A stretch of DNA of 64,000 nt, from contig NW_027271466.1 in assembly GCF_040938485.1 (NCBI RefSeq), forward strand, positions 2,728,001 through 2,792,000. Reading direction: 5' to 3'. The notes under the pieces are model-generated. The model saw only the letters and a program-made list of their open reading frames with translations, was not told the origin of the DNA and did not search any database. Positions 14,901 to 40,900 of the stretch are shown one piece after another (position 1 is the first letter of the stretch; each line of letters begins with the position of its first letter). Source of the stretch: Diadema antillarum. Lineage: Eukaryota. Made by a program: the position numbers and the translations under genes.

Positions 14901-17173
14901 CCCGCTGAAATGAAATTGTAAGTTGAATTTCCCTTGGATTTTATGACAGCTACATGAAGTAGAGTTTTTTGTTTGCTTGTCAGTTTGTAAGATACAATGT
15001 GAATGTCAATGCCCCCTGTAACTCTGGAAAATGTATAACTCCCTGTAATGCCATGTGTAGTCACATAACGTGTGTGTATGTTTACAAAAATACAAAATAA
15101 TGTAGATGTGCAATGTTTGATAGGGAGCTGCACTGATACTAGTCACATGTACTAGCATTTTGTGTCACAATATTTACCTCCCTGGCAAAAAAAGAAAGAA
15201 AGAAAAGAAGAACAAATAAATAATGATGAAGACATGAATTTCTGCAATATGTATTTTGCACACATTATCCTAGTCGGACCGATAGTATAAACCACATGAT
15301 GATTTTATGAAATATTTCTTTTGTGTAGTGTGAAGCAAAGGATGAAACTTCCTTCATTCTGCTAAGATATTACATCACCCAAGCAGAGATGAAGCCATAG
15401 AGAGTAATTATCATGCTTTGTTTGCACTTCGCAGATACAAGAACCAGCCTCACATGACCTTTGACGATGTGAGAGCAGAGCCAGACCAGCTGTTTGAAAT
15501 GCACAGAGATGACCGGGGAGAGCTGGAATACGCCACCAAGTGAGTTTTTACGTCATGTTTTGATTATGGCTCATAACTTCTGATCCATATGTCGTTTGTG
15601 ACCAAACTTGGCTGATAAATGGCCCTTGGGGAGTTGAAGGTCACCGCAAAGTCAAAGGTCATAGGCGGGGTCAATGAACTTCTGGGAGTTATCTATGCGA
15701 ATGGGTGAGACACATTTTGGTACTTGCCTTGTTTTTAACAAATTTTGTAGCCCATTTGTTTCATTTTTTAAGGTGATCATACTATCAGTGTATCTTGGCT
15801 CTTGTGTAGTACTAATTGATCATTTCTCAAAACTAGTTTGTCTCAGGAATATTTGGTCAGATTATTTCAATGCTGTTAAGTTGTGCTATAAAGAATATGA
15901 GCTGTTGTAAATACAAGTTTGTATTTTGCCACTCTCACTTGTACAAATTTTTGTGCTATGAATGCAGTCTGTGGTACTGTCTATCAGATTGATAAGAAAG
16001 TGATATTACATGTTTTCCTCAAGGAGTCTTTGGATTCTAGAGATTTACAGTATAGTGCTGATCCTTAGTTATGACAAGTTGAAGTGTTCCCAAACTGTAT
16101 CGCTATGTGGGAGGAGAAAATGGAGGCTGTAAGCTTGATTACAAGTGGCATTGCTGAATTGAAGGCAACATGCTCCCTTTCTTGCTTTGCAATATATTTC
16201 AGTAATGCTGTATTAGCTGATGACACAGAATACAACTTATCTCATTTTGATACCTGAATATATGAGTGCTTTTGATTTTAGGACTTTTAGGATTGGTCAG
16301 GAAAAAAAAAAAATTGAATATTGAATATGAGCCATCTTTGATTTGCATTAAATTTGGTTGGAACAGCTGTTGTGCCTGTTTGTAAGGTTCTTTGTTTGGA
16401 CTTTGCAGGGCAGCGCGGTTCTTCAACGTCAATCATCTCTCCATACACTTCTCGAGGAACTTTGGTGCTGACACTTCCAAAATCTACTACATCGGTCTGA
16501 GAGGTGAATTTACGGAGGTGAGTACTGTCCAGCTGAGTGAAAGATTTTCCACTAAAAATTGACATGCACCTCTTGTGCACAACAATTTCACCCATTTTCA
16601 TAATTTCACCCATTTTCATATTTCACCCATTTTCATAATGGATTGCTACATCATGACTCGGACACATCTGGTTTTGCAAAATTTAAAAATCCTAGTAAGA
16701 GGATATTTGCAGTTTTTATCTAGATGTTCAGAACATATCATTCTCCCAAACTTTTTTTTTTTTGAGTGATAATCCTGTAGAAGATTTTGATATAATTTGT
16801 GAAATAAGTATATGCGTATTAAAGCTGATGTGACTTAGAACTAAAAGTCGTAGATAACAGATACATGAAACACCACTAGTGCTTTCTTTCTAAAATTGTA
16901 TTTTGTTTGTTTGTGTTTTTGTCTTTTACCTTTCCTCAAATTCATCTCTTTAAAAAAAAAAATGTCAGTGTGTTAATCTTGTCGCTAGGTCCAGCTAGTT
17001 CAGTTGGCTTTGTAATCACTGTTTGAAAGAGTTTTTTCCATGTGAACCAACCTTCTCTTCAAATCTTGCAGGCCCAGAGACAGGGAGTCTTGCTGGTGTC
17101 CTACGAGGCCATGCCCAACCCCAAGGACCACAAGACAGATCTAACGGAAAATGTCCAGCAGCAGATCAGGTAG
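11904..17173 (+). CDS. PITHD1: PITH domain-containing protein 1, complete CDS, 208 aa
   Basis: Exons 11904-12092, 14026-14069, 14840-14917, 15435-15539, 16409-16517, 17072-17173 sum to 627 nt. MSHGHSHG start, VFKPWEER, FVESDDDEELLFNIPFTGNVKLKGI, IYYIGLRGEF match PITHD1 as recalled. Confidence 0.96.
12638..13375. repeat. Near-perfect 738-bp palindrome (fold-back) in PITHD1 intron 1
   Basis: Arms 12638-13016 and 13018-13375 with a 1-nt centre (C13017). I found about 3 substitutions plus a 21-nt extra tandem unit in the left arm. The mirror ORFs 12568-12828(-) and 13206-13424(+) confirm the symmetry. Confidence 0.95.
13376..13769. mobile_element. MITE with telomere-like (CCCTAA-like) interior, left terminus disrupted by the palindrome
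   Basis: Collinear with the reverse complement of 58060-58510: GAAATAGGCCCCACC, GGGGCTTTCTTCCACAGTAT and CGCACAGATGCACG are shared. Confidence 0.7.
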
Positions 17174-23690: not shown

Positions 23691-25293
23691 AAAGCAATTA
23701 TCGATCACAATCACAAAAACTTTACCCCAAAAATACAAGCTCCCAAGGATAGTACTTATCGAAGAAATTTCAGGAAAGCAGAGTACTGACAAGCTTCTTT
23801 TAAAAAATATTTGTAATATGGTGGAGAAGTGAACACTTGATATTAGTCATGCATTTGCAATCAGTATCTCTTGTTCTTTTACTATGCAAGCATAAATTTG
23901 TGTGAGCACTCACATAAATATCTGTGTGGGACTGTGAAACTGGAATCGTGAATTTGTCTGTAACAAGGCCTTCATAGATCCTTTGTATTTAATGGTATAT
24001 TATTCAAACAAAACAAACAGAGACAAACTTATTTTATTCTTTTCTTTGAATACAACATTAAAAGTCTATCATGATTTTGTGTTAGAGATCAATCAAACTG
24101 AAGACTTCTCCCCAACTACATTTTTCTTTCTTTTTACTGGGCTTAGCTCTCAGAAATATGCACATTGCAAAGTTGCTGGCTATCCAAACAAAAACAAATA
24201 AGCAAACAATCTTATATCCTAAAACACCATAGTTTCTGCATTCATTATATACAAATACAAGGTCAAGGCAGGTACATGTAGTACATCATGGGAAAAGTAC
24301 TGGTGAATCCTTATAGTGCATGACTACACTCGGTTCACACGTTTAACTTAACACACAGAGTTTCTGGCAAACTCCCTTCTCACTACCATGAGTTTCCAGT
24401 AAAATGCATTTCCATCTTTTTTAATGCCTCCGCCACAAAGTGATGACAGTGGCATTATTCTTTAATTTTGTTGACTTCATCAGACAACTATGTCAAAATT
24501 AACTGCTTTTCTGCATGGTGCTGTCTGATTGAGCAAAACGTTGAGCACATCATCAAAAAAATGCATTCATATCAGTGTAGCACCAAACTGAAAATGATCA
24601 CACATCTACTGTACTTAAAAGTAAATAAGGAAGAACACAGGATTCCCAAAAGAAAATCAAAAGGAAACAACCCCCTTCCCACCACCCCCTCAAAAAAAAC
24701 CCCACAAACTCTTACCCCAGTCATTTGTTGACATTACTGTCAAAAGAAAAGTAGGTTTTCTTGTACTTGCAGAAAAAATAAAGAAGAATTGACTTTATGA
24801 TCACAACTTTAAGATACTAGAGTACTACAATCCAGTAACACAAATGCCCAATTACTTCACACACTCCAAATGATTTCACAGTGTATCAAATACAATCTTA
24901 TGAAAATTGCACCTGAAGTATACTTTTTTGGGGGGATATAAATTTGTTCCTTTTGTAGTAAGAGACTTCAACTGCAAAATGCTTTGGATGGTCTTGAAGT
25001 GAGGCAGGGTCATAGCAGCATTGACAAGATACTCTTTGATTTGTGGTTACCATGTGGACCAAACACAAAAGTGTTTGATCCACCAGACAACTGGAAGACT
25101 TCCTTAGCACCATGGAAAAATACTAGAGAAATTGGTATCGGAAAATGTGACGATCATGCACGTCACAACAATCTGGAAATTAAGTGCCTGATGAAAGTGA
25201 TAAATTTCTTGCAATCATTGTATCATTTCTTCTGCCATCACCAACGGAACATGTAAATCACTTGTGAACAGGATCATAAGAAAAAAAAAAACT

Positions 25294-25307
25294 GTTGCCA
25301 TGGAAAC
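25294..25307. promoter_or_regulatory. Isolated RFX X-box-like motif GTTGCCATGGAAAC
   Basis: Near-consensus palindromic X-box. Motif only. Confidence 0.3.
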
Positions 25308-25417
25308 TGTAAATACATTCAACTATGATGATTCGTACCTCTTCATCAGGCACACACCAGTAGGAGTGCATGTGTCACGTTACGTTTGCTGCGTTGTGAC
25401 ACAGCTGACCATTCTTT

Positions 25418-26390
25418 GGCTGCGTTTATCAACTCCTTTTCTCGGCAGAAACAGGTTATCCAAACAGCTTTCCAGGAATTTTTACGAGTTGACAAACGCA
25501 AAGCTGTTTTGAAAGCCCTTTAGGAAAGCCTTTTACGAAAGGGTGCGTTTATCAACTCTCCTTTCTCGGCAGAAACAGGTTATCCAAACAGCTTTCCAGG
25601 AATTTTCAAGAGTTGATAAACGCAAAGCAGTTTTGAAAGCCCTTTAGGAAAGCCTTTTCGAAAGCCCAAAATTTGTGACGATCCAAACAGGTTTCCTAAA
25701 CAGGTTATCAGAAACCTGTTTGTAAAAGCCTTTCGAAGTTGATAAACGCAAAGCTGTTTTGAAAGCCCTTTAGGTCGCCCTACTGCGGTTACGCAACCAT
25801 GCGTTTCCGGTTTCTGAAAAGACGCGCGCCACGTAAAGTGCACACGAGTACGTGTACACAGGTGTATACAGCTGTGTGTAATGCACGCACATGCTTGGAA
25901 CAAGGAGGTGTTTCTTTCACCAACAAGGTTTGAGAAATAGAGTAACAAAGCAGTCTCATTCCCTTTGATCCCATGTCTCATGCCGCCACTCAGAAATATT
26001 TGAAGTATGTGCTAAACTGGAGCTGCCTCACAGATAGGCCAGACAATTGATTCATGTGGCATTGTATCATGACTCGTCACTCTCAAAGGAAGATAATTAT
26101 GTCTTTATGATGGTAATTGCTTTTCGCCGTCCCTTCTTAGAAAACAAGCGGCACATTAATAGTACAGGCAGTCAGGGCTTTAGGGCTCTCGAAAAGGCTA
26201 TGGAAAAGGGCTTTCGAAAGGGCTATCGAAAGGGCTATCGAAAGCCGTTTAAACAGGGGAAAGTTGATAAACGCAGCCGACAAAAACAAGCGGCACATTA
26301 ATAGTACAGGGGAGTGGACAGGGCTTTCGAAAGGGCTATCGAAAGGGCTTTCGAAAGTAGTTTAAACAGGGGAAGTTGATAAACACAGCC
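25418..26390. mobile_element. Non-autonomous TIR element (possibly PIF/Harbinger-like) with tandemly duplicated termini
   Basis: TIRs GGCTGCGTTTATCAACT / AGTTGATAAACACAGCC; left end duplicated (~125 bp), right end duplicated (~112 bp); internal AGGGCTWTCGAA repeats; no TSD found. Confidence 0.7.
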
Positions 26391-26474
26391 ATAGATAAAC
26401 AGAATAACACAAGTTACAAAGGTCTGCAAAGACAAATAGTGTGTTGGCTCTGTTGATGTTTTTTGAAGGGAGTC

Positions 26475-29400
26475 TCAGGTTGAATTCTGATTGGCCAGTT
26501 TTCTGCGCTTTGATCTTGGCCTTCCTGCACTGTTCTCTCCCTGGACCATCTCTCTAGGGATGTACCTGTCAACTGCTGACTCTGTTTTCTCGAGAATGGC
26601 AAGGACGCTGGTCAAGATCTTCTCGTCCTCCACCAGGGCGACTTTGCCGTGGAGGCGCTCGAGGACAGCATGGCACTTCTTTGGAAGACTGTCCTGTAGA
26701 GGCTCAGCCGCCCCGTTGTCATTTCCATCCCTCCCGATGAGGAGGGATGGCTTCAATGGCGTCGTCTGCTCAATTTCTCGAGCTGCAATGTCCAGATGTG
26801 CTTCTGCATGCTGAAGATCACCGTTGGGATCTTCGCTCCCAGTCCGGGCAATAATTGGCTGCTTGCCCACGATCTTGTGGACGAAGTCGTAGTCTATGCT
26901 AAAGTACGGTGACTCCGTGTATGACGTCGGCAGGTCTGACCAGGACCAGGAGTCCACGTGGACAAGGATGGCCAGGATGTGCTTGCAGGGCAGGGCCGTC
27001 CGGTCCCAGGTCTTGCAGCTGCAGTCCGGCCGCATCAGGTTGACGGTCAGGGGGTCCGGCGTGGCGGACCTTGATGTCGGCTGCACGTGGAAGATGCCGC
27101 AGCTGGCGTCGAGGAGCTTGACGTGTTCTACCCTGACGCTCCTGGTGGCCTTCCACTGCTGCAGGCAAGCCTGGAGGAAGGGGCGGGGCCGCTTGTGCAA
27201 GAAGGTGGGGACGGTGCTGCTGTACTTCCGGCAGCCATCGTCCGCTTTGGAGTTGGACTGGAAGTATCTGCAAAGAAGGTTTCATGATCTCATTATTCTT
27301 GTCACAGTTCTCCTCAACTCTTGTGGATATGACTACTAGGGGATGTGATAGCCTTATAGTGTATGAGTACACAGTAAACTGTACAGCTTTAACCAGGATA
27401 GTAAAATGTAATGCACAGCACGTTCTTCATAAGTCATATCAATAATTTTTTATTCTTCTTCTTCTTCTTCAGTATGTCATTCTTCAAGGAAACCCTGGTG
27501 AGGTAAAAATGTGTGTCAAACCTAAATGTATGTATCAAAGAGACCTGGGCTCTGTTTTACGAAGAGTTATGATTTATCATACAGTCGATTTCTATCATAA
27601 GTCTATGGCAGCTCGTGTGGTAAGGAAATTCATAATCGCTTATATCTTGATAAAACGGGGTCCTGTACGACTAGATGAATCGATCAATTACCTACTATTT
27701 CAACTACACGCTTTGTTTGTATGAAGGCTACAATGTCTTACAGATTGTTTGTAAGTATTTCATATCAAAATCATATTAATAATCCTGATGCTGGAGACAA
27801 ACAAGTGAGTTAAATCAAAGAAACAAAGAAAAGAAACAAACATACACAAAAATAGCAGGCAAATCACATACAACAAACAAAAATTCCATAAAAAATTGGT
27901 TATTGGTCTTACGCGGATTTGTTCTTGGGTAGGAATCTGTGGAGGATGTGGGAGATAAGCTGGGTTAGTTTTGGTTGCTTGTCGGATGAGAGGCAGGTGG
28001 TGCGGAAGAGTTTGTTCTGGAGGCCGACGCCCGCACTGGTGTTGACTGCCTTGATGAAGCTTTGCTTCCTAAAGGCACGTACCCATCGCTACAACAAAAT
28101 GCATCAAATCTATTAGAAACTAATTTATCATATTTGTCAAGTGAACACTGTTGCATATACCAAAACACAATGACATGATTTAGTGGTTATTTTCAACAAA
28201 GAATACTATTTGAAATACATCCTGTAGATGGTTTATTGTTCAAGTATTGCAAGAAGTCTGTGAGCCCATTCTCTCAGCCTTACAATGTTTGTAGCTTGTC
28301 AAGCTATTTTATTTTACTGCCATTCTACTCAATTGTCTGAAACTTAAAAATACTTGGCTGCAAAGCAAGTTGTATAAGCCCTCTCAGACGTGCCAATACA
28401 ACAGTCTCATTTAAAGGTGACTGCAATAAATAAAATGCAAAACAAAACTGAAATACGCATAAATTGGGTTCAGAATCATTTTGCTTGAAATGACTGCTAG
28501 CTTCAGAATAGATCAGAGAAAGGAAAGAAAGAAGAAAATGATGAAGAAGCAGGTGAAGAAAAAGAATGACAAGAAAATGATGACAAAGAATAGGAAGTAG
28601 AAGATATACAAAGAAGATGAAGAATACATAAAAACACACTTGTAGAAGAAAAAGAGGGAGGAGAAAAGGAAAAAAAAAAGAAGGGAAGAAGATAAAGTAC
28701 CAGAGCAAGGAAGAAAGAAAGAAAAAAAGAAAGAAAGAAAGAGAGAAAGAAAAAAAAGAAAGAATGAAAGAAAGAAAACATATAAGAAAGAGGAACAGAG
28801 GAAATCACGTTGGCATCCCGGGTAAGATTAACCCATTGAGGACGGGCTGATTTTGCTAGAACATACATTTCCCATAGACACCTGCCCGAGTATACTCGGG
28901 ACTCATCCTAAATGGGTTAAAGGTCCCACTCACTTGGTGGGTAGGGAGCCAGAGACGCCCCAGCCACTCTCTCAGCCCTGCATTCTCACTCCATGCGGGG
29001 CTAGCTTGGAGGTGGATCACAGCCGCATAGTACTCCCCCTCTGTGCCGGAGCCCGCCACCCGCTCCAGGAGGGGAAGCACGCTCTGGCGGAGGCTCCGAT
29101 GACCGTTAGACTCGGAGCCCAGCCAATGGTCCCAGGCATACTGCCGGTGGTAGTCGCAGAAGTAGACAGAGTAACCTTGGCATCAATAAGAAATGATGGT
29201 ACCAGTGGAATTCAAGAAACAATCATCATAGTTGATTAGAAAGATCAAGACAACCATTCACTCTATAGATTCTCTAAGCCATGATATCTCAAAAACCACT
29301 GTAACACTTCTTTGGCTTGGTACTGTATTTACTCTTTATTATGATTTTTATTCATCATTATTATTTTCTTTTTTACTTTTTTCAAGGTACATTTGTAGAG

Positions 29401-32400
29401 TGAAGAAAAATGATATTTCACCTTTTGTTATTGTAATATAAAATTGCTTGCTTTGGTGGAAGAAAATTGGCAACACATTTTAGAAGATTAAAATTTCTGT
29501 TTCTCTTTAAATTGGCAACTTTGTGTAATCTTTTTACTGATTTTGTGCTGATTTAGTGAATCTAACCAGTTTTTATTACCTCTTCTTCCTCTATACCTCT
29601 TTCAGTCCAAACAGCAGCATGTTTATAGAACGTATGTAATGCTAACAGCATTTTAAGATAGTGATCGTGTGAGGGTCAATGACACTCCATAACAAACCTG
29701 GGAAGCTCTGCTGGACTGCGTTCACATCGTCAATGGCGGCATCAGTCACAAAGTTGGCCGGCAGCCATGAGGGATTCCACTCCTTGAGGACAGACAGGGC
29801 TTCAACAATCTGGCCCTGCTGCGCCTCCTCGACAACGAACGTAGCCACCACCTGGTAGTCGCAGTTGGTCTTCACCAGAATGAGGTAGACGGGTAAACTG
29901 CACCTGGGATAGACAATGAATGACCACATCTTTTGTACAGGCTCTGGACAATGGTTTGAGGTGTGAGGGATACCAACAAATTCTCAATTAATTCGCATGA
30001 GGCATTAGAGATGAATAAGTCGTAGTCCTGATTAGCAAATATTTCCATCTTAGTCCCGTATCACCTTTTACTGTAAAAGTGGATATTTTCGTGTGTGTAA
30101 TTTTTCACGCTCAGCTGGGTAAGATCGGTTTCGTTTTTAATTCTGCGGAGTCAAGACATGTGCTACTGCAGCATAAAACAAGCATAAATATTTGAATGCT
30201 CTTATTTTCATGCTAGTTTCTGATTGCGTGAAGTGTGGGAAAAATTTCAACACCGCGAAAATTCCACTTTTACAGTAAGCAACAACAATGTTTGATATAA
30301 TCTCATAACATATGACACATATATGTTGTGTCCATAACTTTAATGCATATATACACGTATTATGTGGTAGCTCCTAATTTTTCAAGGATTATCTGTATCA
30401 AACTTGAATGACAAACACTAGTTCCCACAACACTACAGTGTTTCATTTGATCTATCGATCATTCCCAAGGCATTATTAAAGGTCAAGTTCAGAGGCACAC
30501 CACTAAATAAAAATATAAAAAAACTCTAGTCTCACCATCACACCAAATAGGTCATTGCAGCTGACAAGATATGCTGTGATGCTTAACCCTAACACATTAA
30601 GTAAAGACAATACTACACTGCATACTTACACATGCTTCTCCAAAACTGTGGGATTACTTGGCTCTACAGATATAAAATTCAAATTACCACAATAAACAGT
30701 TTCTACAAATGAAATTTAGAAGCCAAAGTTTTCAAAAAGATGTTCATAGTTTTGGGATATCCTGAGCAACATGGAGGTCTTGCAGTGCTGTAAGATATAT
30801 TTGTGAAGTTTTTCACTTTGGAAATTTGTGTGTAATAATTTTTAGTTTATTATGAATACTGGCATTCTCCATGCAGCTGAAACGAAGCATTCTTATTTGG
30901 GGGCTTTTCATGTAAACAAAGACAAATTATTCTTACCCTGTGGTCCTATACACAGGATCAAGCACACATAACTCATTGCCATATCTTGCCAGCAGGTATT
31001 GCTGCCACGCAGTCTGATGGACCAGAAGCATGTTGTCCCCAGTTGGTGTCACCATCGGCACTGGTTGCTGCACCTGCAAATGTTGTTGCTGCTGCTGCTG
31101 GGGCTCCAGTGGCCTTGGAGGTTGTGACTGGACCTGAACAACTGCCTGCGTTGGATCTGGCAGAGGGAGTGGTTGCTGTGGAAGACTTTGCTGCGATGGA
31201 AGCTGAAGAGTTTCTGAGTGTTGCCCCAGTTGTTGCTGAGTCTGTTGCTGAGATGCTGCTGGTGGTGGTGGTGGTGGGGGTTGTAGTGGTTGCAGTGGTG
31301 GTGCTGGTAGTTGCTGTGATGATGCATTGATGAGATGCTGGTGAAAGACCTGCATCTGCTGCAGGTGCTCGAGAGGAAGTTGCTGCAACATTTGCTGATG
31401 TTGCTGGTGGTGATTGGATTGCGGCAGTTGCTGGGACTGTGCTAGATGCTTGGCTTCTAGCTGCTGGGCATGTTGCTGGCTTCCATCCTGGGACAGCATG
31501 TGTTGTTGGTGTTGCACAAGTTGTTGGGTTGCCTGGTATTGCTGAAGTACTTGTTGCTGCAAGGAATGCTCCTGTTGTTGAGTATGTGGCACAGGTTGTA
31601 ACTGCTGTTCACTATTGAACTGCTTCTGATTCCCTAAATTTCCCTCAGACCTGTGGGTCTGCAAAAACAGATTTTGCAGAACTTGTGTAGTAGTGAGGAG
31701 ACAAATATCTCTGCAACAGCGCTTTTTCATTGACTGCAATATATTCAACCTTTTTTAGACGCATCCAACAATTTTGTTCTTGACGCAAGAGCAAGCCTAC
31801 TGTACATCTCAGCTGCACAAAGGATTTTGACAATGTGGGTGTAAAAAAAAAAGAAAAAAGAGAGAAATCAACACTCCCATGGGGCCATATCAGAGGAGCA
31901 CCCACATGAAAGTATGCTGGGGGATAGAACACTTTCCCACTTGCAATCCATCACAACTTGTTGTTGTTGTTGTTTTCATACACACAAGACCCACTGATAA
32001 AGTGATCTGCATTGTATCACTAACCTCTACATCATCACATCTTAAATTAGTCATTTGGGCACCACAACAGCTATGCCACGCTCTTGATCAAATTATAGCT
32101 TGGTTTAGAAATGAAATATTCTCTAGTTAATCAAATTCTGTCTCTAGAAACCTTTCCAGAGAATTCTATTTTTTTTTTCATTATCATTCTTTTTTTTTCA
32201 TTGTGACATTAAATCATATGTCATAGCATTTTTACTTCAAGCTAATATTTCAGCATCCATTGCGACTATAAAAATCTTGTATTATGCTTCAAACAGGGGT
32301 ATGCCTTTTCCCTTGATTTCTTGAACTAACACTTTTGACTACGCAATGCTGCCATTTACACAATACAGGGACTTCAATAAACCAAAATATTCTACCTTTT

Positions 32401-35400
32401 TACCACCTTTGCGATAGAAGAAGAGTTGTGCAGGATCGTCCTTCTGCCACTCTGATATCTTGACCTCCAGATTTGACTGATTTGTCTTGCTGAGTTTCTT
32501 CTTGGCCTCTGCAGAATACATGTGATATCTGGGATGATATTGGTGGCAAGTGGTAGTGATGGTAGTGATGAGGGTGGTGGTGGTGGCAGGCATGGTCATG
32601 GTAGAATTGGTAGTGGTGGTGACAGAGGTGGTTGCAGTGCAATTGGTGATGGTTGTGATGTGGTAGTGGTAGTGATGTTGGTGGTGATGATGATGGTGGT
32701 GGTGTTGGTGCAATTGGTAGTGGTAGTGATGTTGGTGGTAATGTTGGTGGTGGTGTTGGTAATGTTGGTGATGGTGCAGTTGGTGATGGTGTTGATGGCA
32801 GGCATGGTGATAATAGTGATGGCAGTGTTGATGGTGTTGGTAGTGGTAGGGATGGTAGAGTAGGGATGGCAGTGTTGACAGTTGTGGTAGTGATGGTGAG
32901 GTTGTTGTGGTGATGGTGTGTGTGGTGATGGTGGTAGTAGGGATGGCAGTGGTGATGGCAGTAGTGATGGTGGTTGGTGTGAGGATGGAGATTATGGTGG
33001 TGATAGTCGTTGGAGGAGGAACAGAATCCAAGGAAGAATGTCTCAATATGCAAGATCTTGGCTTCATGTACATGTATCTACAACAACAAATGTGATACAT
33101 AGTCTTTCTGTTCCTAACCCCACAACATTTTGGGCTCAAACACTGGTACAATGGAATGAAAAAAAAAAAATCTATATATCGATCCAGGTCATTAACATCA
33201 CGCTGTAACAACATCACCCTTTTCATCATTTGTTTTAATATGAAACAGATAGGAAAGCACTGATGCTAATGGTACCATGCCACAAATGCACAGAGGGAGG
33301 TGAATCCTATCATCAATAGGCGCAACTGCAATCATCACTTTTATCAGAGCAAGGTTATCACCACCTCTGTATGTGTTGGCACTCACATTATAGTGGAAAT
33401 CGCACAAGGAAATTCAGAGTTATATCAATCCTCTCCAATTAAGAAAATAAATTAAATGAAAGAAATGAACAAAATTTCCTTACCTGATGTCGCTGTCTTC
33501 CGGGAAATACCGCCTGTTGCTAAGGTCTGGGCCGGGCTTGCCCCAGAAGAGGGCACCCGAGACGAACCTCTCTATGTGTAGCCTCATCTCACCCACACTT
33601 GTCACCCCGGCACCTACCATACGCTGGATGTACTCAATGATGCGGTGGTCAACGCGCTGACGAGCCCCGCAGATCTATGGTGGGAATGTGACTGTTTGAG
33701 TTATTCAGATCATGGTCTTGGTCAGAATATATAAAGGATCACTGTTGGCTGGCTGTAACCGAAGTATTGCCACAGTTGTTAAAATTCAGATAATTTGAAA
33801 ATTGGTCGCAAATGCTTTCTAATACAGAAAATAGACTTTAATTTTGTTTTAAAAAAACAGAAAAAAAACCCACATCATTACAGGGTATATAACGTTAGGC
33901 AGTTAAGACACAATAGAACTGGTTTTCCCACTGCAATCGCAATGTGTATGAAACACACATTTCCAGACAGAGTCGCTTCATCATTTCTATTTTCTTTTTG
34001 TATCTTCTTTCTGTGTTTCTCTCTATTTTACTTCTTTGTTCTGCAGTAAACTCAAAACAGTCAAATCGCTTTCATCTCTTTTAGCGGAGGACGAATGAAT
34101 AGAAAAATTAAAGAAAATCTTTTAGTCAGTGTACAGTCCTCGGGAAAAAAATCAAACTATCAGTTGTACTCAAGGCACTGAAGTGCTAGGAAGTATAAGC
34201 CAATATCTTTCACCTTTCCCACGGGATGTCCTTCATGCTCGCATTCCTCAGGGAGGTAGATATAGATTCTTCTCTCTCCGTTTGTCTTGCCAGCTTCTAT
34301 TGCACTCCATGCTCTCTGCGCTGCCTGGCGGCGATCATAGTTTGAATTCTTTGTGATCTACACAACAGTGAAATTAAGAGAAGAATATATAAAAAATAAA
34401 TACATAAATAAAATAAAACAATATCCAGAAATGATTTCATGACAATGCCACTTAGTATGAGGAAGTGTCAAAAGATGCAAGGCAATAAATCCAAACTGAA
34501 TTGCTTGCTAAACGCTGTGAGAATGCTTTTTAGTTCAGCAATTTAAAGGTGCATGGTCCCGGTGTTTTAGTCAAATGCGTACACGGGCGCACGGCGCAAG
34601 TTTCCTATAGAGACCTACGCTATCGACTCCTATTTGGTGCTTACGCTTTGGCCCACTTTCCCCGAGTCCGAAGAAGTCCGATTCACTGTAGTCCGTGGTC
34701 CGATCACACTTCGGCTCATGATTCGGCTGAGGGGGATGACAGCTTCAGCAAACTTCTTTTGTGATGTCATAATAAGAAGCACATATGCACGCACCCTAAC
34801 ATTACTACAGACTGCGCGATGCGCAGAGGAAGACAACAAAGGCAACGTTACTTAGCAACACCTACGCACTTTACTCTTGATGACAGCTCAACTTCGGTAA
34901 TCTTCGTATCTATGCTAACGGTGATCGGCAGCATCATCAACAGCGCCCTCTACACTACCGGGACTATGCCCCTTTAAGGTAGAATCAAACTTCATACTTT
35001 TCAGCTATCTAAAGTGAACAGAGTCCACAGAAGAGATTGAATGAATCAATGCCTGGGCTCTTTCAATATTTCACACTGTAAAAATAGTAATACACCTGTA
35101 CAGGAGCGGATCTAGAAATTCTGTAAAGGGGCGCAACTAATATTTCTGGTGCCACTTCCGGGTTTCATTTCATTTTTTTTCTTTTTTTTTTAATGAAAAA
35201 TAAAGGGGGGGGGCGTGCGCCGGTTGCACCCCCCTCTGGATCTGCCACTGCCTGTATGTGAGCTGGGCATTTATGTAAAGACTTTCAGCCATGCATAGAG
35301 TAATCAAATCACGCTCTCTTCTTCCAATGGAATGAATATAATGCAATGAATATCACGAAAGTGACTAGGCCCCATCAACGACGTGGAGAAATTCTATTTT

Positions 35401-37840
35401 GAGGACGCGGGTGTACAAACCTTGAATTCTGGAAACTTCATCACTTCTTTCATGACCAGTTTGGCCTGGCAGTCTTTCTTCTTTGTGTCCTGGATAAGAT
35501 TCCTGGCGCTGTTGGAGTTACCAGTCTCTCTTTTCTGAGAAATTAGACATACATGTAGTGTTCAACAAAGGAGCAAGTAATATGTCAGGACTTCATGAAA
35601 ATGACCACAAATGTGTACTATCTGTACCGATGTGTTGGCTCAGTGAGTAGAGCGGCTGCCCTCACAATCGGGAGGTCGTGGGTTCAAACCCCGGCCGCGT
35701 CATACCAAAAGACGTTAAAAGATGGGAGTTGCTGCTACCTTGTTTGCCGTTCAACAGTTGAAAAGGTTAGAGCAACGTCGATCTGGCGCTGCTCAGTGGC
35801 TGCCGGGCCCACGATCAATTGGGCAAAATGAATTTCCATTCTTGGACAATAAAATTTGGAGTTTATATCCAAAACAATTATTATCATTATTATTGTTATC
35901 TACAATTATGATTGGCTTCTTGTTAACTATACGGTCAGTAATATAATCAGCCCCTCACAAAAGGCAAATATCTTCCATCCACTCTGCTGTGCAAACTTAC
36001 TTTTATATGACAGCAAGAACAAGTGTTGGAAATGAAGTAGAATTTCCCCTTTTCCATTAAGAGATCACAAAACTTTGCATGCATATATATGTTTATTTTT
36101 TCAAGGAACGAATGAAGTTCACCAATATTATGATTTATTCCACTTTGCATGCTTTATTGTGTAAAACAGCCTTTGAACTACGCTCACCTATAAGAAGCAG
36201 CAGCAGTCGTGTTCAGACAACTCGCATGTGCCTACATACATGTAGATCGCACAGTCTACACAGCAGAGTGAATGGAAGATAGATCTGTCTGTTGTGAGGG
36301 GCCAACCGTATATTACCGACCATACATTCAACAAGAGGCCAGATAATCATCAATCTAGAATGCTCCAAGGGAATACAAAAAGAGAGAGAGAGCGTGATGT
36401 TGTAAATGTGGTTTTGATTCCAATGACTGCAGCAATGATGCCTTGGAAAGTGCTTTTTCACCACCACATAACATAACATAACAGAACATGCTGTATGAAC
36501 AAATAACAATTACTATTCTTGTTGTCCAGTTTCCTATTAATAAAGCAAGTATAGAGTTCAAACACATTATTATTACCTAACTCACAGTGATTCAGTATCA
36601 TCTATCACTATGCCATTGAGACCTACCCGTTTCTCTGCTCTTGCTGCTTTGGCCCGCACCTTGGTCTTGAACTTGTGATCCTTGCCGTACTCGCACTCGT
36701 AGATGTTTTTGTTAAGGTGCATGAAAGGGATACCGTCATATTCTATCTTTCCACCGTGGCTCCTTTGAGCCTCCTCCCATAGAATCCTGTGCTTGCATTT
36801 ATCCACAGCTGTAAAGTATGGCACAAGAGCATAAGAGATATAGATCATAGAGATTAAGGGCACTCCCTGTATGCTTTGTTTCCCCACCCCCTCCCCATAG
36901 TTCTTCTTTAATATCTCTCATGTATGTCTTGCTTAATGAAGACATACTTCAGAGGTATATGCAGAATTATCCTGTTAAAGGTGTTAAATTCAACTCTCAA
37001 CCCCCCCACACACACACATACACACACAAACACCCCGGGTAATTTAAAAATGACCAAGCTAATTAAAAAAAAATCAGAATTAGACCTTGGCATTGCTTCC
37101 CTTCTACCCTACACTTTTACACTTCAGACCTCTACAGCTTTTGAACTGGAAAAGCTCTAGCAAGCTCTACAACTTTATTGGTCAGATTGAAATTATAACA
37201 CTGGAGTAACTTTTATGTGAAGGTGTAGATTTAGAGTTGAGCTGGAGTCGGTTTTTGCTATCTCTCTTCATTATTATTATTGCCATTATTGTTTGCTACA
37301 TTGCTACATTGGAATTGGATTTCGAAGATAATGCCTGAAAAAAAAAAAGTGTCAAAAGCATGCACACACCCACCCACACACACGTGCACACACATATCAC
37401 AACTTAAATTACATATTTTTTTCGCCTATTTTGAGACACTTAAGACGTTCCAAAATCTGAAACTAAACTGTGTAACTGTTACAACTTACTAGTACAAGGA
37501 GCGCCCCGGGGACGGGGTGAGTGCGGTCCCAGCCAGCGCGGCGACGGAGCTTTACCGCATACCGTCCCCACAAGTCTGGGGGTGAAAACTTTGAATAGTC
37601 CGCTCGATGGCTACGCCTACTGTACTTACAAATAATTATTGTCGCTGTCCACTTACCTGTCCTTCCAAAATGGGCAGAGGTCTTCAGTGACACGAATCTG
37701 AGTGTTTTCTCAAGCTCATGACTTTCTTTCACCATCTCTGCCCGAGCTTTGGTGTAAACATAGCCGAAATTGTGAGAAATTGCCACATCGAATTTTACTG
37801 TGTTCCCAACAACACTCACTTCTGTGGAAGAACCAGCCAT
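26475..37840 (-). CDS. CaRF/ALS2CR8-like DNA-binding domain + Q/P-rich insert + MULE transposase-like domain + SWIM Zn finger, ~1028 aa, probably a domesticated transposase
   Basis: Exons 37657-37840, 36627-36808, 35421-35534, 34214-34357, 33484-33674, 32396-32528, 30937-31658, 29698-29903, 28934-29175, 27913-28088, 26475-27267 = 3087 nt, all GT-AG, in phase, no stops. Motifs: YDGIPFMHLNKNIYECEYG, KKKDCQAKLVMKEVMKFPEF, LPEECEHEGH, RRYFPEDSDIRYHM (CaRF-like); LLVHQTAWQQYLLARYGNELCVLD, KTNCDYQVVATF, FVTD, CDYH (MULE core); CSCKTWDRTALPCKH (SWIM). The exon 6/7 junction has alternative donor choices. Confidence 0.88.
28500..28790. repeat. Purine-rich (GAA/AAAG) low-complexity tract, intronic
   Basis: Read directly; lies in the intron between exons 28934 and 28088. 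Confidence 0.85.
30071..30275. mobile_element. MITE with TA flanks
   Basis: TA|CTGTAAAAGTGGA...TCCACTTTTACAG|TA. Confidence 0.75.
32540..33010. repeat. Degenerate (GGT/GAT/AGT)n trinucleotide microsatellite, intronic
   Basis: Lies between the exon ending at 33484 and the exon starting at 32528; it explains the His/Thr/Val-rich ORFs in the track. Confidence 0.85.
34547..34973. mobile_element. Kolobok-like MITE in an intron of the transposase-derived gene
   Basis: TTAA flanks (34543-34546, 34974-34977); TIRs AGGTGCATGGTCCCGGT / ACCGGGACTATGCCCCT; CpG-rich interior. Confidence 0.75.
35101..35250. mobile_element. 150-bp CAG-ended MITE with 6-bp direct repeat
   Basis: CCTGTA|CAGGAGCGGATCTAGA...TCTGGATCTGCCACTG|CCTGTA. 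Confidence 0.8.
35627..35900 (+). mobile_element. tRNA-derived SINE
   Basis: A-box TGGCTCAGTGAG, B-box GGTTCAAACCC, unrelated body and a (TTA)n-like tail. Not a complete cloverleaf tRNA. Confidence 0.8.
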
Positions 37841-37933
37841 GTTTACACACAACCAACCGGGAACCTTTCTCGAAAGTGTGACAGCGCCATCTCTCGTTGA
37901 AAGAGTGCTTTCGGTGTCTTTCTTGCAATCAAA
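37841..37933. promoter_or_regulatory. 93-bp head-to-head spacer (bidirectional promoter / 5' UTRs)
   Basis: ATG at 37840 (-, AAACATGG context) and ATG at 37934 (+, AAAATGG context); CpG-enriched surroundings 37500-38200; CAGCGCCATCT motif. Confidence 0.7.
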
Positions 37934-40900
37934 ATGGCCGCGCCCATGAGATTATTTGCTTCAGCAAGACGGACCCAGTGTTTCTCACAATGTATGCGAC
38001 CATGTGCATCAAACAACACTATCATCCAGGCCAACAGTATCGGGTCAATATCCAGTCCTCTCAAAAATACTCTCCTGTCTCATGTAAACCCTGGATTTGC
38101 CATTAATTGCCGATCTGCATTCACGATATCACCCCGGCGATCTCGGAAACTGGACACGCCGAAGAGATCACGAGATTTCATCTCCACCTTGAGAAGGGAT
38201 GAGCGAGAAACTCTCTTCGAAGAACTTTTGAAGTATCACAACTACAAAGCCAGTCTCAAAAGTGGCATTGCAGCTGGGAATATTTCTTCAGGTGTGCTTT
38301 CGAATCTCCTCACTTATTTTTGTTTTATTTTCTTTTTTCATTTTCTTTTTTTTTTTTTTTTGACTGATTCACGATTGAAGCTGCCGCCATGCCGGCTGTG
38401 TAGTGACATTCCTGACAATACAGTCACTTGCATGATGTGGTGAAGTTTACTCAGTAATGGTTAGTCTAGGCCTACTTTTTTTTTTTAATGTAGGTCAATA
38501 TGGCTCTGCAGATAAGCCCCTTATATATATATTTTTTTTGTCAATCTAACGTTTGGACTTAGTAACAGTGTTCACCTCAGTGCTGTGGTGTTATTTACTT
38601 GTCTTACTTAGATCTTCATAATCACACTATCACCAAGCGTCGCGTTGTGGGACTGGACAGGTTGTAGGACCGGACGCGTATTGTAAGTGCGTCTGTAATA
38701 AAAATGACGCACCCAGGAATTTTTCAGAGTATGTTGTCTAGTATATGAGGAGTCTACATTTGTAAATTGTATATCAAGACAAGTCTATGAGGTAAAGAAG
38801 GGTGCATATATATTCCATGTAAAATAGGTAAGTTTTCACCTGTTCACAGGCGAACTTAAGACGTTAAGTGTCCGGAAACACAACCCCCCATACTACCAGG
38901 CAACAAGCCATAGCATAGGCTATGGCTATAGGTACAGTAGAGTTTTTGGAATGATTTGAACATCTTGAATAGGCCCCTATTTGAATTTGATGTTAGCTTC
39001 AAGAAATGAGAAAGAAATCATTTGTATTGCACCCCTGCTTCTTCATTTTTAATGTCCCAAGTCTGTTGACATTCACTTCTTCAAACAAGTTTTGTTCACT
39101 CTGTGAAATGTTGTTTGTGTGTTTGTTTGTTGTTGTTTTTTCAGATCTTCCACAGCAACCAGCGGCACCATTACCCACCAGTCAACAGCTGAGGTTGGGT
39201 AAGATAAATTTAAGAGTTCAAAATAAAGGTGTATGTGGCTGCTACATGTTCGTAGGTCTACTTAATAATAGTAGGTGTATTTACAGTAATCTACTAGGTA
39301 GTTGATCTTTCTCTTCTTTTTTTTTTTCTCTTTGATAATCTCATTATACATGCAATGTGGCTTCATTCAGATTGTTTTCATTTGTCATGGTATTTACTTT
39401 ATGTTATGACTGTGTCTGCATGTTGTAAATCTATCAAGCTAGGTATAGCACTATATGCCTTGATATTTAACTGTAAATCTTAAGCCATCTTTGCATTGTA
39501 CAAGTATCAAAATAGAATGCAAATCATCCTTCCAAAGAGTCATGAGAATTATTTAGTCTTAAAGACTATTGATGTCAGTTCAATAATAGTTTAACTACAG
39601 TGTAGACCGTGGTCTGTAATTGAACTGACATCAATGGTCTTTATGCATTGCCTAGTTTGAATTTTTTGTCACTTCAGATTTGACCTGCTTGTGGAGTACT
39701 GCACTTGAATAAATGTGCTCATCTCTGTGGAGTTTCATATTCTGAACTATCGCTAATGAGAACCTATTTGGTCCTCTGAACAAATTTTGCAGTCTGAATT
39801 TCACAATCTTAATAGTGAACATGTGCTTGCATGTTCTAGGTATTAAACTCATTTGACTTTATGAAAATTATTTCCCATAGATTTGATAAATGATGGCAGA
39901 TCAGGTTCCAGTGAGTATTTGGTCAATGAGTACCATGTTTTGTAATGTATGCATCTTAACAGATTCTCAAGCTATTCTTACCATTTCTCTCACTCAGTTG
40001 CCTTCAGCAATGCTCTCCCATTCATCGGGTTTGGATTCTTCGACAATGCCATCATGATAATCGCTGTAAGTCAATGCTGGCAAATACTGCCAACCTTTAG
40101 GCTATGTAAAGATTTTAGTCATGATGTTAACCCTCTCTGTGCCAGGGACAGTATGTACATGTACATTGTACAATGTCATCTAAAGGGTTGTCTGTGCCAG
40201 TCAGCACTCAAAGTACCTCAAAGGTTAAGGATACTAACGGAGGAGATGGATGGAGAAAATACGGAAAGATAGCCAAGAAGAAATGGGAAGAATACAAGTG
40301 CACACTTTGTTTCATGTTAGTGTATTGCTTTTGGCGGTTTTTCTTGTATCTGATCATTTGATAAGTTTCCCCTACATTTACAAAATATGCTCTCATATTA
40401 TCTCATTTTGGCATATTGTAAAAAGTACATAATTTGTCTTCAGTGTCTTAAATCTTATTGTTTCACTTGTTTTTGTTTCCTTTTGTAAGAAAAAAAATTA
40501 TCTAAAAATCAATTGTGCCATTATATTCAAATGAATATGGTTATCTTTGTGTTACAGGGGGATTACATCGATATGACCATAGGTGCAGCCCTCAGCATAT
40601 CCACAATGGCTGGTGAGTATGAATGCTCCAAAGAAAGGGCATTATTCTTGTCATTTTCTTTCTAACAACGTCAATAACAGGCAGTAACCTTCAGCATCAC
40701 ACTTTCCTCAATTTTCATGGACATTTCATGTATTACAAAAGTTTGGGATCATAAAATAAATTGGATATTGTATTTTTGCAGTTTTAAAGTCGAAATTTTC
40801 AGTCCTTCATTGGCTTCCTCAGATTTATGGATTCGTAGTGTGAGAAACCCTTTCAATTTTCTTCACTCTCAACTCTTACTTTTGAAAGGATGTTGGCAAT

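What the first reader, a model, noticed from the sequence alone, without database searches (positions are those of the whole stretch)
27913..28088. Third catalytic residue of the DDE triad is replaced (NTNNGVE becomes NTSAGVG)
The first D (CVLD-PVY, end of exon 7), the second D (FVTD) and the CxxH motif (CDYH) are present. The helix that carries the catalytic E in MULE transposases (T-N-N-x-x-E-x-x-N) reads TSAGVGLQN, with GGC at 28023-28025. That is at least two changes from a Glu codon and neighbouring residues also differ, so a base-call error is unlikely. The prediction is a cleavage-dead protein that still binds DNA and Zn.
Basis: partly seen in the sequence, partly recalled or inferred. 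Interest (0 to 1): 0.7.

Follow-up and report, generated by a model that had tools for sequence, protein, structure and literature searches.

The report
Tamed Mutator transposase lacking catalytic glutamate
This exon belongs to a sea-urchin host gene descended from a Mutator-type jumping-gene enzyme, and the glutamate needed to cut DNA is indeed replaced here and in the one related species found, so the protein probably now only binds DNA, an expected hallmark of a tamed transposase.

Summary
Window 27913-28088 (minus strand) is exactly exon 10 of an 11-exon gene. It encodes a CaRF-type (ALS2CR8) DNA-binding region, a Gln-rich linker, a MULE RNase-H-like domain and a SWIM finger.

- **The residue.** The exon reads NTSAGVGLQN with GGC (Gly) at 28023-28025. 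Intact-looking relatives from bivalves, amphioxus, frogs and a jellyfish read NT[NT]NG[VIL]E.Q[NH] in a gap-free alignment, so Gly sits on the catalytic Glu.
- **The rest of the site.** D1, D2, CxxH, the conserved Trp and the SWIM Cys/His are all kept. The D2-to-His spacing of 24 residues matches Muta1 and ISCth4.
- **Not an error.** Contigs from two studies of the same species match the exon exactly.
- **The orthologue.** The only orthologue recovered is 60% identical, with the same intron positions and saturated synonymous sites. It has Arg (CGT) there, so the Glu was lost before the two species split.
- **Selection.** The gene is under purifying selection (pN about 0.2, pS about 0.8) and has no flanking inverted repeats.

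Muta1 E419A still binds DNA but cannot cut or join it, which supports the "cleavage-dead binder" reading; this is inferred, not shown. The scan has already reported a similar tamed gene on another piece of this genome. My tree places that gene's loss of Glu as independent of this one. This is a new member of a known kind, of modest interest.

The parts
26475..37840 (-). Whole gene, 11 exons: start codon at 37840-37838, stop at 26475-26477. The TMEM65 start codon lies at 37934 on the + strand, 93 bp away and divergent.
   Evidence: Open stretches and splice sites; tblastn of homologues' N-termini onto the window. Boundaries of exons 1-6 are approximate.
33483..36917 (-). Exons 2-5, encoding the ALS2CR8 (CaRF-type) DNA-binding region. 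The coding pieces lie within 36585-36917, about 35418-35507, 34163-34357 and 33483-33674.
   Evidence: Pfam PF15299 scores 40.4, 26.6 and 41.2 bits on three exons; a fourth piece was found by tblastn. Exon 5 is 89% identical to the orthologue.
30937..31754 (-). Open stretch holding exon 7 (acceptor not fixed): Gln/Pro/His-rich linker followed by the start of the RNase-H-like domain. D1 (GAT) is at 30957-30959.
   Evidence: The Gln-rich part is also present in the orthologue. D1 aligns with the D of LLDATY in homologues.
29698..29903 (-). Exon 8. D2 (GAT) is at 29741-29743, in FVTD.
   Evidence: Pfam PF21056 scores 26.5 bits. The alignment places it on the invariant D100 of A1. The variant at 29741 is synonymous, GAT to GAC.
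28934..29175 (-). Exon 9, start of the helical insertion. CxxH (CDYH) is at 29147-29158, with the His 24 residues after D2.
   Evidence: Muta1 (D283 to H307) and ISCth4 (D241 to H265) have the same spacing of 24.
27913..28088 (-). Exon 10, the finding itself. Conserved Trp at 28083-28085; helix NTSAGVGLQN at 28014-28043; Gly (GGC) in place of the catalytic Glu at 28023-28025.
   Evidence: The exon is identical in contigs from two studies. The orthologue has CGT (Arg) at this codon.
26475..27267 (-). Exon 11. SWIM finger (CSCKTWDRTALPCKH) at 26979-27023, then a poorly conserved tail, a conserved C-terminal helix and a basic SKRRKL motif at 26496-26513.
   Evidence: Pfam PF04434 scores 34.8 bits. 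The Cys and His residues are kept in three orthologues. The basic motif is conserved in L002 and L003.

Best explanation
The exon is part of a host gene derived from a MULE (Mutator-like) transposase whose ancestral element already carried an ALS2CR8/CaRF-type DNA-binding region at its N-terminus and a SWIM finger at its C-terminus. After the element was immobilised, the third carboxylate of the DDE site (the Glu on helix alpha-4) was lost. It is Gly in this genome and Arg in the orthologue. Without that carboxylate the two-metal active site should not assemble, so the protein should neither cut nor join DNA.

The two Asp, the CxxH His, the Trp, the SWIM zinc ligands, the DNA-binding region and a basic C-terminal motif are all maintained by selection. 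I infer that the protein acts in the nucleus as a sequence-specific DNA-binding factor. On this reading the dead RNase-H-like and SWIM module serves as a structural, DNA-contacting or oligomerising scaffold, and the Gln-rich linker is a possible activation region.

**Shown here:** the substitution, its homology to the catalytic Glu, its age, and purifying selection on the gene.

**Inferred:** loss of catalysis, retained DNA and Zn binding, and a regulatory role.
For: **Position of the Glu.**
- Fifteen of the 18 well-aligned homologues covering the helix read NT[NT]NG[VIL]E, in a gap-free alignment from an invariant Trp 20 residues upstream.
- The motif spacings here are D1-D2 61, D2-His 24, Trp-site 20 and D2-site 117. 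Muta1 has D214/D283/H307/W401/E419 and ISCth4 has D175/D241/H265/E348.
- An AlphaFold model of the intact relative P0032:200-600 (pLDDT 77) puts D39 at the end of a strand, D100 right after a strand and E217 at the start of helix 216-227.
- The model's best structural matches are ISCth4 transposase (Z 14.1, 214 residues, model 19-255 on chain 160-385) and then Hermes. The linear offsets fit E217 on E348.

**Loss of function when the Glu is missing.** Muta1 E419A abolishes transposition in yeast, and in vitro it keeps end binding while losing cleavage and joining.

**Host gene, not a decaying element.**
- The orthologue L002 has an open 509-residue C-terminal reading frame across five exons. 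It has identical intron positions and phases and is 60% identical.
- Against that orthologue, pS is 0.68-0.84 and pN 0.19-0.29. Exon 10 alone gives pN 0.205 and pS 0.81.
- Differences from the congener printed by the read-laying tool are mostly synonymous in the conserved part: 11 synonymous against 5 conservative replacements.
- No terminal inverted repeats flank the gene.

**Age of the loss.** The orthologue has Arg (CGT) at the site.
Against: - No assay was done, so loss of activity is inferred from one residue.
- D1, D2, CxxH and Trp remain conserved. This could mean that some metal-dependent chemistry persists.
- No RNA run was available, so expression and the splice model are unconfirmed.
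- Only one orthologous species covers the exon.
- Synteny could not be tested, because the orthologue's contig ends inside the gene.
- The spliced protein of this window could not itself be scanned or folded, because it has no single reference. The structural argument therefore rests on a 36%-identical relative.
Confidence: 0.82

Rival explanations
1. The protein is still a nuclease or recombinase. The two Asp and the CxxH His, perhaps with an acidic residue supplied from elsewhere or by a partner, are enough for some DNA cleavage.
For: D1, D2, Cys/His and Trp are conserved between the two orthologues despite saturated synonymous divergence.
Against: No acidic residue is conserved within the helix in both orthologues. 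The site itself differs between them, Gly against Arg, so it is not selected for a particular chemistry. Every single DDE-to-Ala change kills Muta1.
Confidence: 0.08
2. It is a decaying, immobile transposon copy, and the lost Glu is ordinary pseudogene drift.
For: The family has multi-copy members elsewhere: the P0032 cluster has 11 members at 90% identity or more in Phyllobates and a related frog (Ranitomeya), and one of them alone lies on 10 contigs. A frog copy (P0141) also has Gly at this site.
Against: The gene has eleven spliced exons and open frames. Intron positions are conserved and pN is far below pS against a distant orthologue. There are no terminal inverted repeats. Depth over the exons resembles unique sequence, next to intronic repeats that are thousands of times deeper.
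Confidence: 0.04
3. The catalytic Glu is elsewhere and intact, and the alignment is misleading.
For: MULE secondary-structure predictions are atypical (PMC5499845), and the loop before the helix is modelled with low confidence (residues 203-213).
Against: The alignment is gap-free from the invariant Trp to the helix across 12 sequences. The spacings match Muta1 and ISCth4. There is no conserved Glu or Asp between the Trp and the SWIM finger in both orthologues except one Asp 14 residues downstream, which the intact relatives lack.
Confidence: 0.04
4. It is a sequencing or assembly error.
For: None found.
Against: Contigs from two studies are identical across the exon. Two base changes would be needed. 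The neighbouring residues also differ, and the orthologue lacks Glu as well.
Confidence: 0.01

Closest known systems
Active MULE transposases, such as Muta1 of Aedes aegypti (and MuDR, Hop, Jittery, Os3378)
   Same: Pfam MULE and RNase-H-like domain hits in the family. D1, D2, CxxH 24 residues after D2, and a Trp about 20 residues before the Glu position. A C-terminal SWIM finger, as reported for Muta6 and many plant MULEs.
   Different: Gly replaces the Glu. There are no terminal inverted repeats. The gene has 11 exons, sits at a fixed locus and is under purifying selection. The N-terminal DNA-binding region is of ALS2CR8 type rather than FLYWCH or WRKY type.
ISCth4 / IS256-family transposase (PDB 6XG8, 6XGX)
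   Same: Best structural match of the family model (Z 14.1). RNase-H fold with a helical insertion that carries CxxH, and the same D2-to-His spacing of 24.
   Different: It is a bacterial copy-out/paste-in enzyme with an intact DDE, only 14-16% identical, without a SWIM finger or an ALS2CR8 region.
Domesticated MULE genes: plant FHY3/FAR1 and MUSTANG, vertebrate ZSWIM1/ZSWIM3
   Same: A transposase-derived MULE core plus SWIM finger retained in a host gene (named as MULE-derived in PMC6446971). Pfam PF21056 (ZSWIM1-3 RNaseH-like) hits the family.
   Different: These are separate domestications with different N-terminal DNA-binding domains. I did not examine the state of their catalytic residues here.
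Vertebrate CaRF (CARF, ALS2CR8)
   Same: The same Pfam ALS2CR8 DNA-binding region.
   Different: I did not test whether CaRF keeps any RNase-H or SWIM remnant, or whether it is orthologous. A 2010 paper states that CaRF has no homology to other transcription factors (PMC2877716). No held paper links ALS2CR8 to MULEs.
Second tamed gene in the same genome: the Diadema P0020 type (XP_071498505), reported earlier by this scan
   Same: ALS2CR8 + RNase-H-like + SWIM architecture, multi-exon, Glu lost (Arg).
   Different: Only 30% identical. It has also lost CxxH. It lies in another, well-supported clade together with intact frog and amphioxus sequences; a single clade with this gene is rejected (AU p 0.011). 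Its neighbours are different genes.

Membership tests
Active MULE (Mutator superfamily) DDE transposase | RNase-H-like catalytic fold with a helical insertion, related to IS256 and hAT enzymes | tested here: met
   The model of relative P0032:200-600 matches ISCth4 best (Z 14.1) and then Hermes. The window protein aligns to it without gaps over the motifs. The window's own spliced protein was not folded.
Active MULE (Mutator superfamily) DDE transposase | First and second catalytic Asp | tested here: met
   GAT at 30957-30959 and GAT at 29741-29743 align with the nearly invariant D39 and invariant D100 of A1.
Active MULE (Mutator superfamily) DDE transposase | C/DxxH motif 15-45 residues after D2, and a Trp upstream of the Glu | tested here: met
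   In CDYH the His lies 24 residues after D2, and the Trp lies 20 residues before the site. The criteria are from PMC5499845.
Active MULE (Mutator superfamily) DDE transposase | Catalytic Glu on helix alpha-4 | tested here: not met
   Gly (GGC) at 28023-28025 and Arg in the orthologue.
Active MULE (Mutator superfamily) DDE transposase | Terminal inverted repeats and target-site duplication around the coding unit | tested here: not met
   In 24000-40000 the only inverted pairs are low-complexity matches or lie within introns and flanks; none brackets the gene. The start codon is 93 bp from the neighbouring gene's start codon.
Domesticated (host-co-opted) transposase gene | Open frame kept across species under purifying selection | tested here: met
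   L002 has an open 509-residue C-terminal frame. Overall pN is 0.26 against pS 0.76, which is saturated.
Domesticated (host-co-opted) transposase gene | Conserved exon-intron structure at an orthologous locus | tested here: inconclusive
   The four intron positions and phases of the C-terminal half are identical. Synteny could not be tested because the orthologue's contig starts inside the gene.
Domesticated (host-co-opted) transposase gene | Expressed as a spliced mRNA | not testable with these tools
   No RNA run holds the sequence.
CaRF / ALS2CR8 family | ALS2CR8 domain (PF15299) above the gathering score | tested here: met
   Single exons score 40.4 and 41.2 bits against a cut-off of 28.9.
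CaRF / ALS2CR8 family | Orthology to vertebrate CARF | not tested
   No vertebrate CARF sequence was fetched.
ZSWIM1/ZSWIM3-like | PF21056 RNase-H-like domain plus a SWIM finger | tested here: inconclusive
   PF21056 scores 26.5 bits on exon 8 alone, just under the 27.2 cut-off. SWIM scores 34.8 bits. Relatives score 30-60 bits on PF21056.

The most novel reading that the evidence does not exclude
An animal MULE lineage that carries a CaRF-type (ALS2CR8) DNA-binding region has been tamed at least twice in the sea-urchin lineage that holds this genome. Each time the catalytic Glu was lost independently while the fold was kept; this gene also kept both Asp and the His pocket. That would make this transposon family a recurrent source of CaRF-like regulators. 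It would also suggest that the dead active-site pocket has a selected non-catalytic role, such as gripping a DNA end or a metal.
Probability: 0.35. Interest if true: 0.55.

Novelty: new member of a known kind. Interest (0 to 1): 0.36.

Why it matters
Loss of a catalytic residue together with purifying selection is the standard signature that a transposase has become a host protein. Confirming it here fixes what kind of gene this locus is and dates the inactivation to before the split from the one orthologue found.

Wider value comes from the context. The intact relatives show that the CaRF-type DNA-binding region is the native DNA-binding part of an animal Mutator lineage, and this genome holds two separately inactivated descendants of that lineage. 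This gives a testable route to the origin of CaRF-like factors. It also offers a natural experiment on what a DD-only active-site pocket is kept for.

Tried and rejected
- **PDB sequence searches.** Neither the last exon nor the family profile gave a meaningful hit, so I used a fold search on a model instead.
- **Scanning or folding the window's own protein.** The spliced protein has no single reference, so I did not paste it into Pfam or AlphaFold. I scanned the exons one at a time and folded a relative.
- **More orthologues.** The word-index protein search with the last exon returned only the two fragments I already had. L003 is too short to reach exon 10.
- **RNA evidence.** None is on record.
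- **Synteny.** The orthologue's contig ends inside the gene. The Diadema P0020 gene has other neighbours.
- **Yuan & Wessler 2011.** The paper is not held, so I took the motif criteria from Liu & Wessler 2017.
- **Weak DUF7078 hit on exon 10.** It has E 0.16 and none of the nine longer homologues scanned hits DUF7078; I treat it as chance.
- **A single shared Glu loss with Diadema P0020.** Rejected by the tree and the AU test. The caveat is that the group was named after I had seen the tree.

Full report
**What is at the coordinates.** The window is AT-rich animal DNA with GC-richer exons. The minus strand of 27913-28088 translates without stops to a 58-residue stretch that contains AVNTSAGVGLQNKLFR. 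The two ends are a splice acceptor (AG at 28089-28090) and a donor (GT at 27911-27912), so the finding's coordinates are exactly one exon.

Joining it to its neighbours gives an uninterrupted reading frame. The neighbouring exons are ...-30937, 29903-29698, 29175-28934 and 27267-26478. The Gly codon is GGC at 28023-28025, two substitutions from either Glu codon.

**The gene.**
- Upstream exons match Pfam ALS2CR8, the DNA-binding region of the vertebrate factor CaRF, at 40.4, 26.6 and 41.2 bits. A further piece lies at about 35418-35507.
- Exon 7 is a Gln/Pro/His-rich stretch that ends in CVLDPVY.
- Exon 8 hits ZSWIM1-3_RNaseH-like, and the last exon hits SWIM.
The start codon lies 93 bp from a divergent TMEM65-like open frame.

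**Is the Gly at the catalytic position?** An exhaustive HMMER search with the last exon found 1157 relatives. Nineteen reach back over the helix, one of them (P0063) only in a poorly aligned stretch. Fifteen of the other 18 read NT[NT]NG[VIL]E.Q[NH]-like there, with the Glu on our Gly.

A MAFFT alignment of ten long relatives, with the window protein and its orthologue added, has no gaps from an invariant Trp to the helix. It also lines up D1 (LLDATY against VLDPVY), D2 (F.xD) and CxxH (LCDFH against FCDYH).

The spacings in this gene are D1-D2 61, D2-His 24, Trp-site 20 and D2-site 117. The characterised MULE Muta1 has D214, D283, H307, W401 and E419 (PMC5225508). The solved IS256-family transposase ISCth4 has D175, D241, C262/H265 and E348 (PMC7780238). 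The D2-to-His distance is 24 in all three.

An AlphaFold model of the intact relative P0032:200-600 (mean pLDDT 77) places D39 at the end of a strand, D100 just after a strand and E217 at the start of helix 216-227. That is the arrangement expected for DDE enzymes (PMC5499845). Its best structural matches are ISCth4 (Foldseek E 9e-6; VIA-align Z 14.1, 214 residues, model 19-255 on chain 160-385) and then Hermes. The linear offsets are compatible with E217 lying on E348. No relative with a solved structure is detectable by sequence alone.

**What the relatives are.** The long relatives carry ALS2CR8 + MULE/RNase-H-like + SWIM, and some add a Ulp1-type protease and a PHD finger. They come from bivalves, amphioxus, frogs, a jellyfish and a sea urchin. 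The Phyllobates cluster has 11 near-identical members, one of which alone lies on 10 contigs, which looks like a mobile family. The CaRF-type region therefore appears to be the native DNA-binding part of this animal MULE lineage.

**Error, allele or ancient change?** Contigs from two runs in different studies of the same species cover the exon with no differences, between them end to end (X1 record 3; X2 records 12 and 13). A congener has the exon with 15 substitutions and no indels, but the tool did not print which bases differ.

The top protein hit led to two contigs that are 96% identical to each other, L001 and L002, from one ENA sample. They carry the orthologue.
- The exon order is the same, and the four C-terminal introns have the same positions and phases.
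- The C-terminal frame in L002 is open for 509 residues and 60% identical to ours.
- Its helix reads AVDTKSGIRLQTQLF, with Arg (CGT) where ours has Gly and intact relatives have Glu.
- D1, D2, CDYH, the Trp and the SWIM ligands are all kept.

CGT and GGC differ by one non-synonymous step. The Glu was therefore lost before the two species split, and the site has changed again since.

**Selection.**
- Against L002, synonymous sites are saturated (pS 0.68-0.84) while pN is 0.19-0.29 in the folded parts. Exon 10 alone gives pN 0.205 and pS 0.81. The tail is looser, with pN 0.40.
- ALS2CR8 exon 5 is 89% identical between the species.
- Of the differences from the congener that the read tool printed, the conserved part has 11 synonymous and 5 conservative replacements. 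One of the synonymous ones is GAT to GAC at D2. This is a partial and selected list.
- A third species (L003) keeps the SWIM finger and a basic K/R-rich C-terminal motif.
- No inverted repeats bracket the gene.
- No RNA run was available, so expression is untested.

**Function.** In Muta1, changing D214, D283 or E419 to Ala abolishes transposition in yeast. The purified mutants still bind the terminal repeat but neither cleave nor join DNA. By analogy this protein should be catalytically dead while still able to bind DNA. The intact SWIM motif and the strongly conserved ALS2CR8 region fit that reading. No acidic residue conserved in both orthologues lies in or next to the helix. All of this is inference; nothing here measures activity.

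**Relation to the other tamed gene in this genome.**
- I reached that gene independently as P0020 (Diadema antillarum XP_071498505). It is multi-exon over 10.8 kb, it has Arg at the Glu column, and its CxxH has decayed to SVSR.
- The window shares interspersed repeats with that D. antillarum locus, up to 96% identity over 211 bp, but none with L001 or L002. This fits a Diadema or closely related origin for the window.
- In a maximum-likelihood tree, this gene and its orthologue form a 100/100 pair on a long stem (1.2 changes per site).
- They sit among bivalve and jellyfish sequences. P0020 sits across a 100/99 branch, with intact frog and amphioxus sequences and a frog copy that has Gly.
- Forcing this gene, its orthologue and P0020 into one clade costs 21 log-likelihood units (AU p 0.011). 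The minimum number of Glu losses on the tree is three. The caveats are long branches and a group named after the tree had been seen.

**Verdict.** The observation and the reading are right. The case is a textbook signature of transposase domestication in a lineage whose link to CaRF I could not find in the literature held here. As a single-residue finding it is a new member of a known kind.

Noticed in passing
window 28827-28921 (intron 9, just after the exon 9 donor): A very high-copy short element with inverted ends (aacccatt ... aatgggtt). Summed contig depth is about 5x10^5, against about 20 for the flanking exons. An 84%-identical copy lies in the Diadema antillarum locus L004 at 15074-15169.
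   Followed up: partly
window 30068-30278 (intron 7) and 27549-27701 (intron 10): Two more high-copy intronic repeats, with depth of 2-3x10^4. The first has 38-nt inverted arms (I2) and many contig joints at 30069.
   Followed up: no
window 32342-33265, minus strand (intron between exons 5 and 6): A long open stretch of His/Thr/Pro-rich low-complexity codons that is open in several frames. It is probably a microsatellite-like array rather than coding sequence.
   Followed up: no
L001 10672-11109 and L002 7373-7841: In the orthologue, the last 70 or so codons (conserved C-terminal helix plus basic motif) occur twice in tandem. The second copy lies just past the stop codon.
   Followed up: no
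L001 6910-7124 compared with L002 3639-3845: L001 has a frame shift inside the D2 exon that L002 lacks. The contig names suggest 2x and 3x coverage, so this may be an assembly error or a broken allele or paralogue.
   Followed up: partly
P0141 (Pseudophryne corroboree XP_063787286) and P0020 (Diadema antillarum XP_071498505): These are two further, phylogenetically separate members that lack the Glu (Gly and Arg respectively). P0020 has also lost CxxH. P0141 keeps CDSH.
   Followed up: partly
P0032 and P0033 (frog and amphioxus relatives): The relatives that look intact carry a Ulp1-type protease and a PHD finger after the SWIM finger. The P0032 cluster is multi-copy in Phyllobates terribilis, which suggests a recently mobile element.
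   Followed up: no
window 37841-37933: Only 93 bp separate this gene's start codon from the divergent TMEM65-like start codon. This implies a shared bidirectional promoter, which is unusual for anything still mobile.
   Followed up: partly
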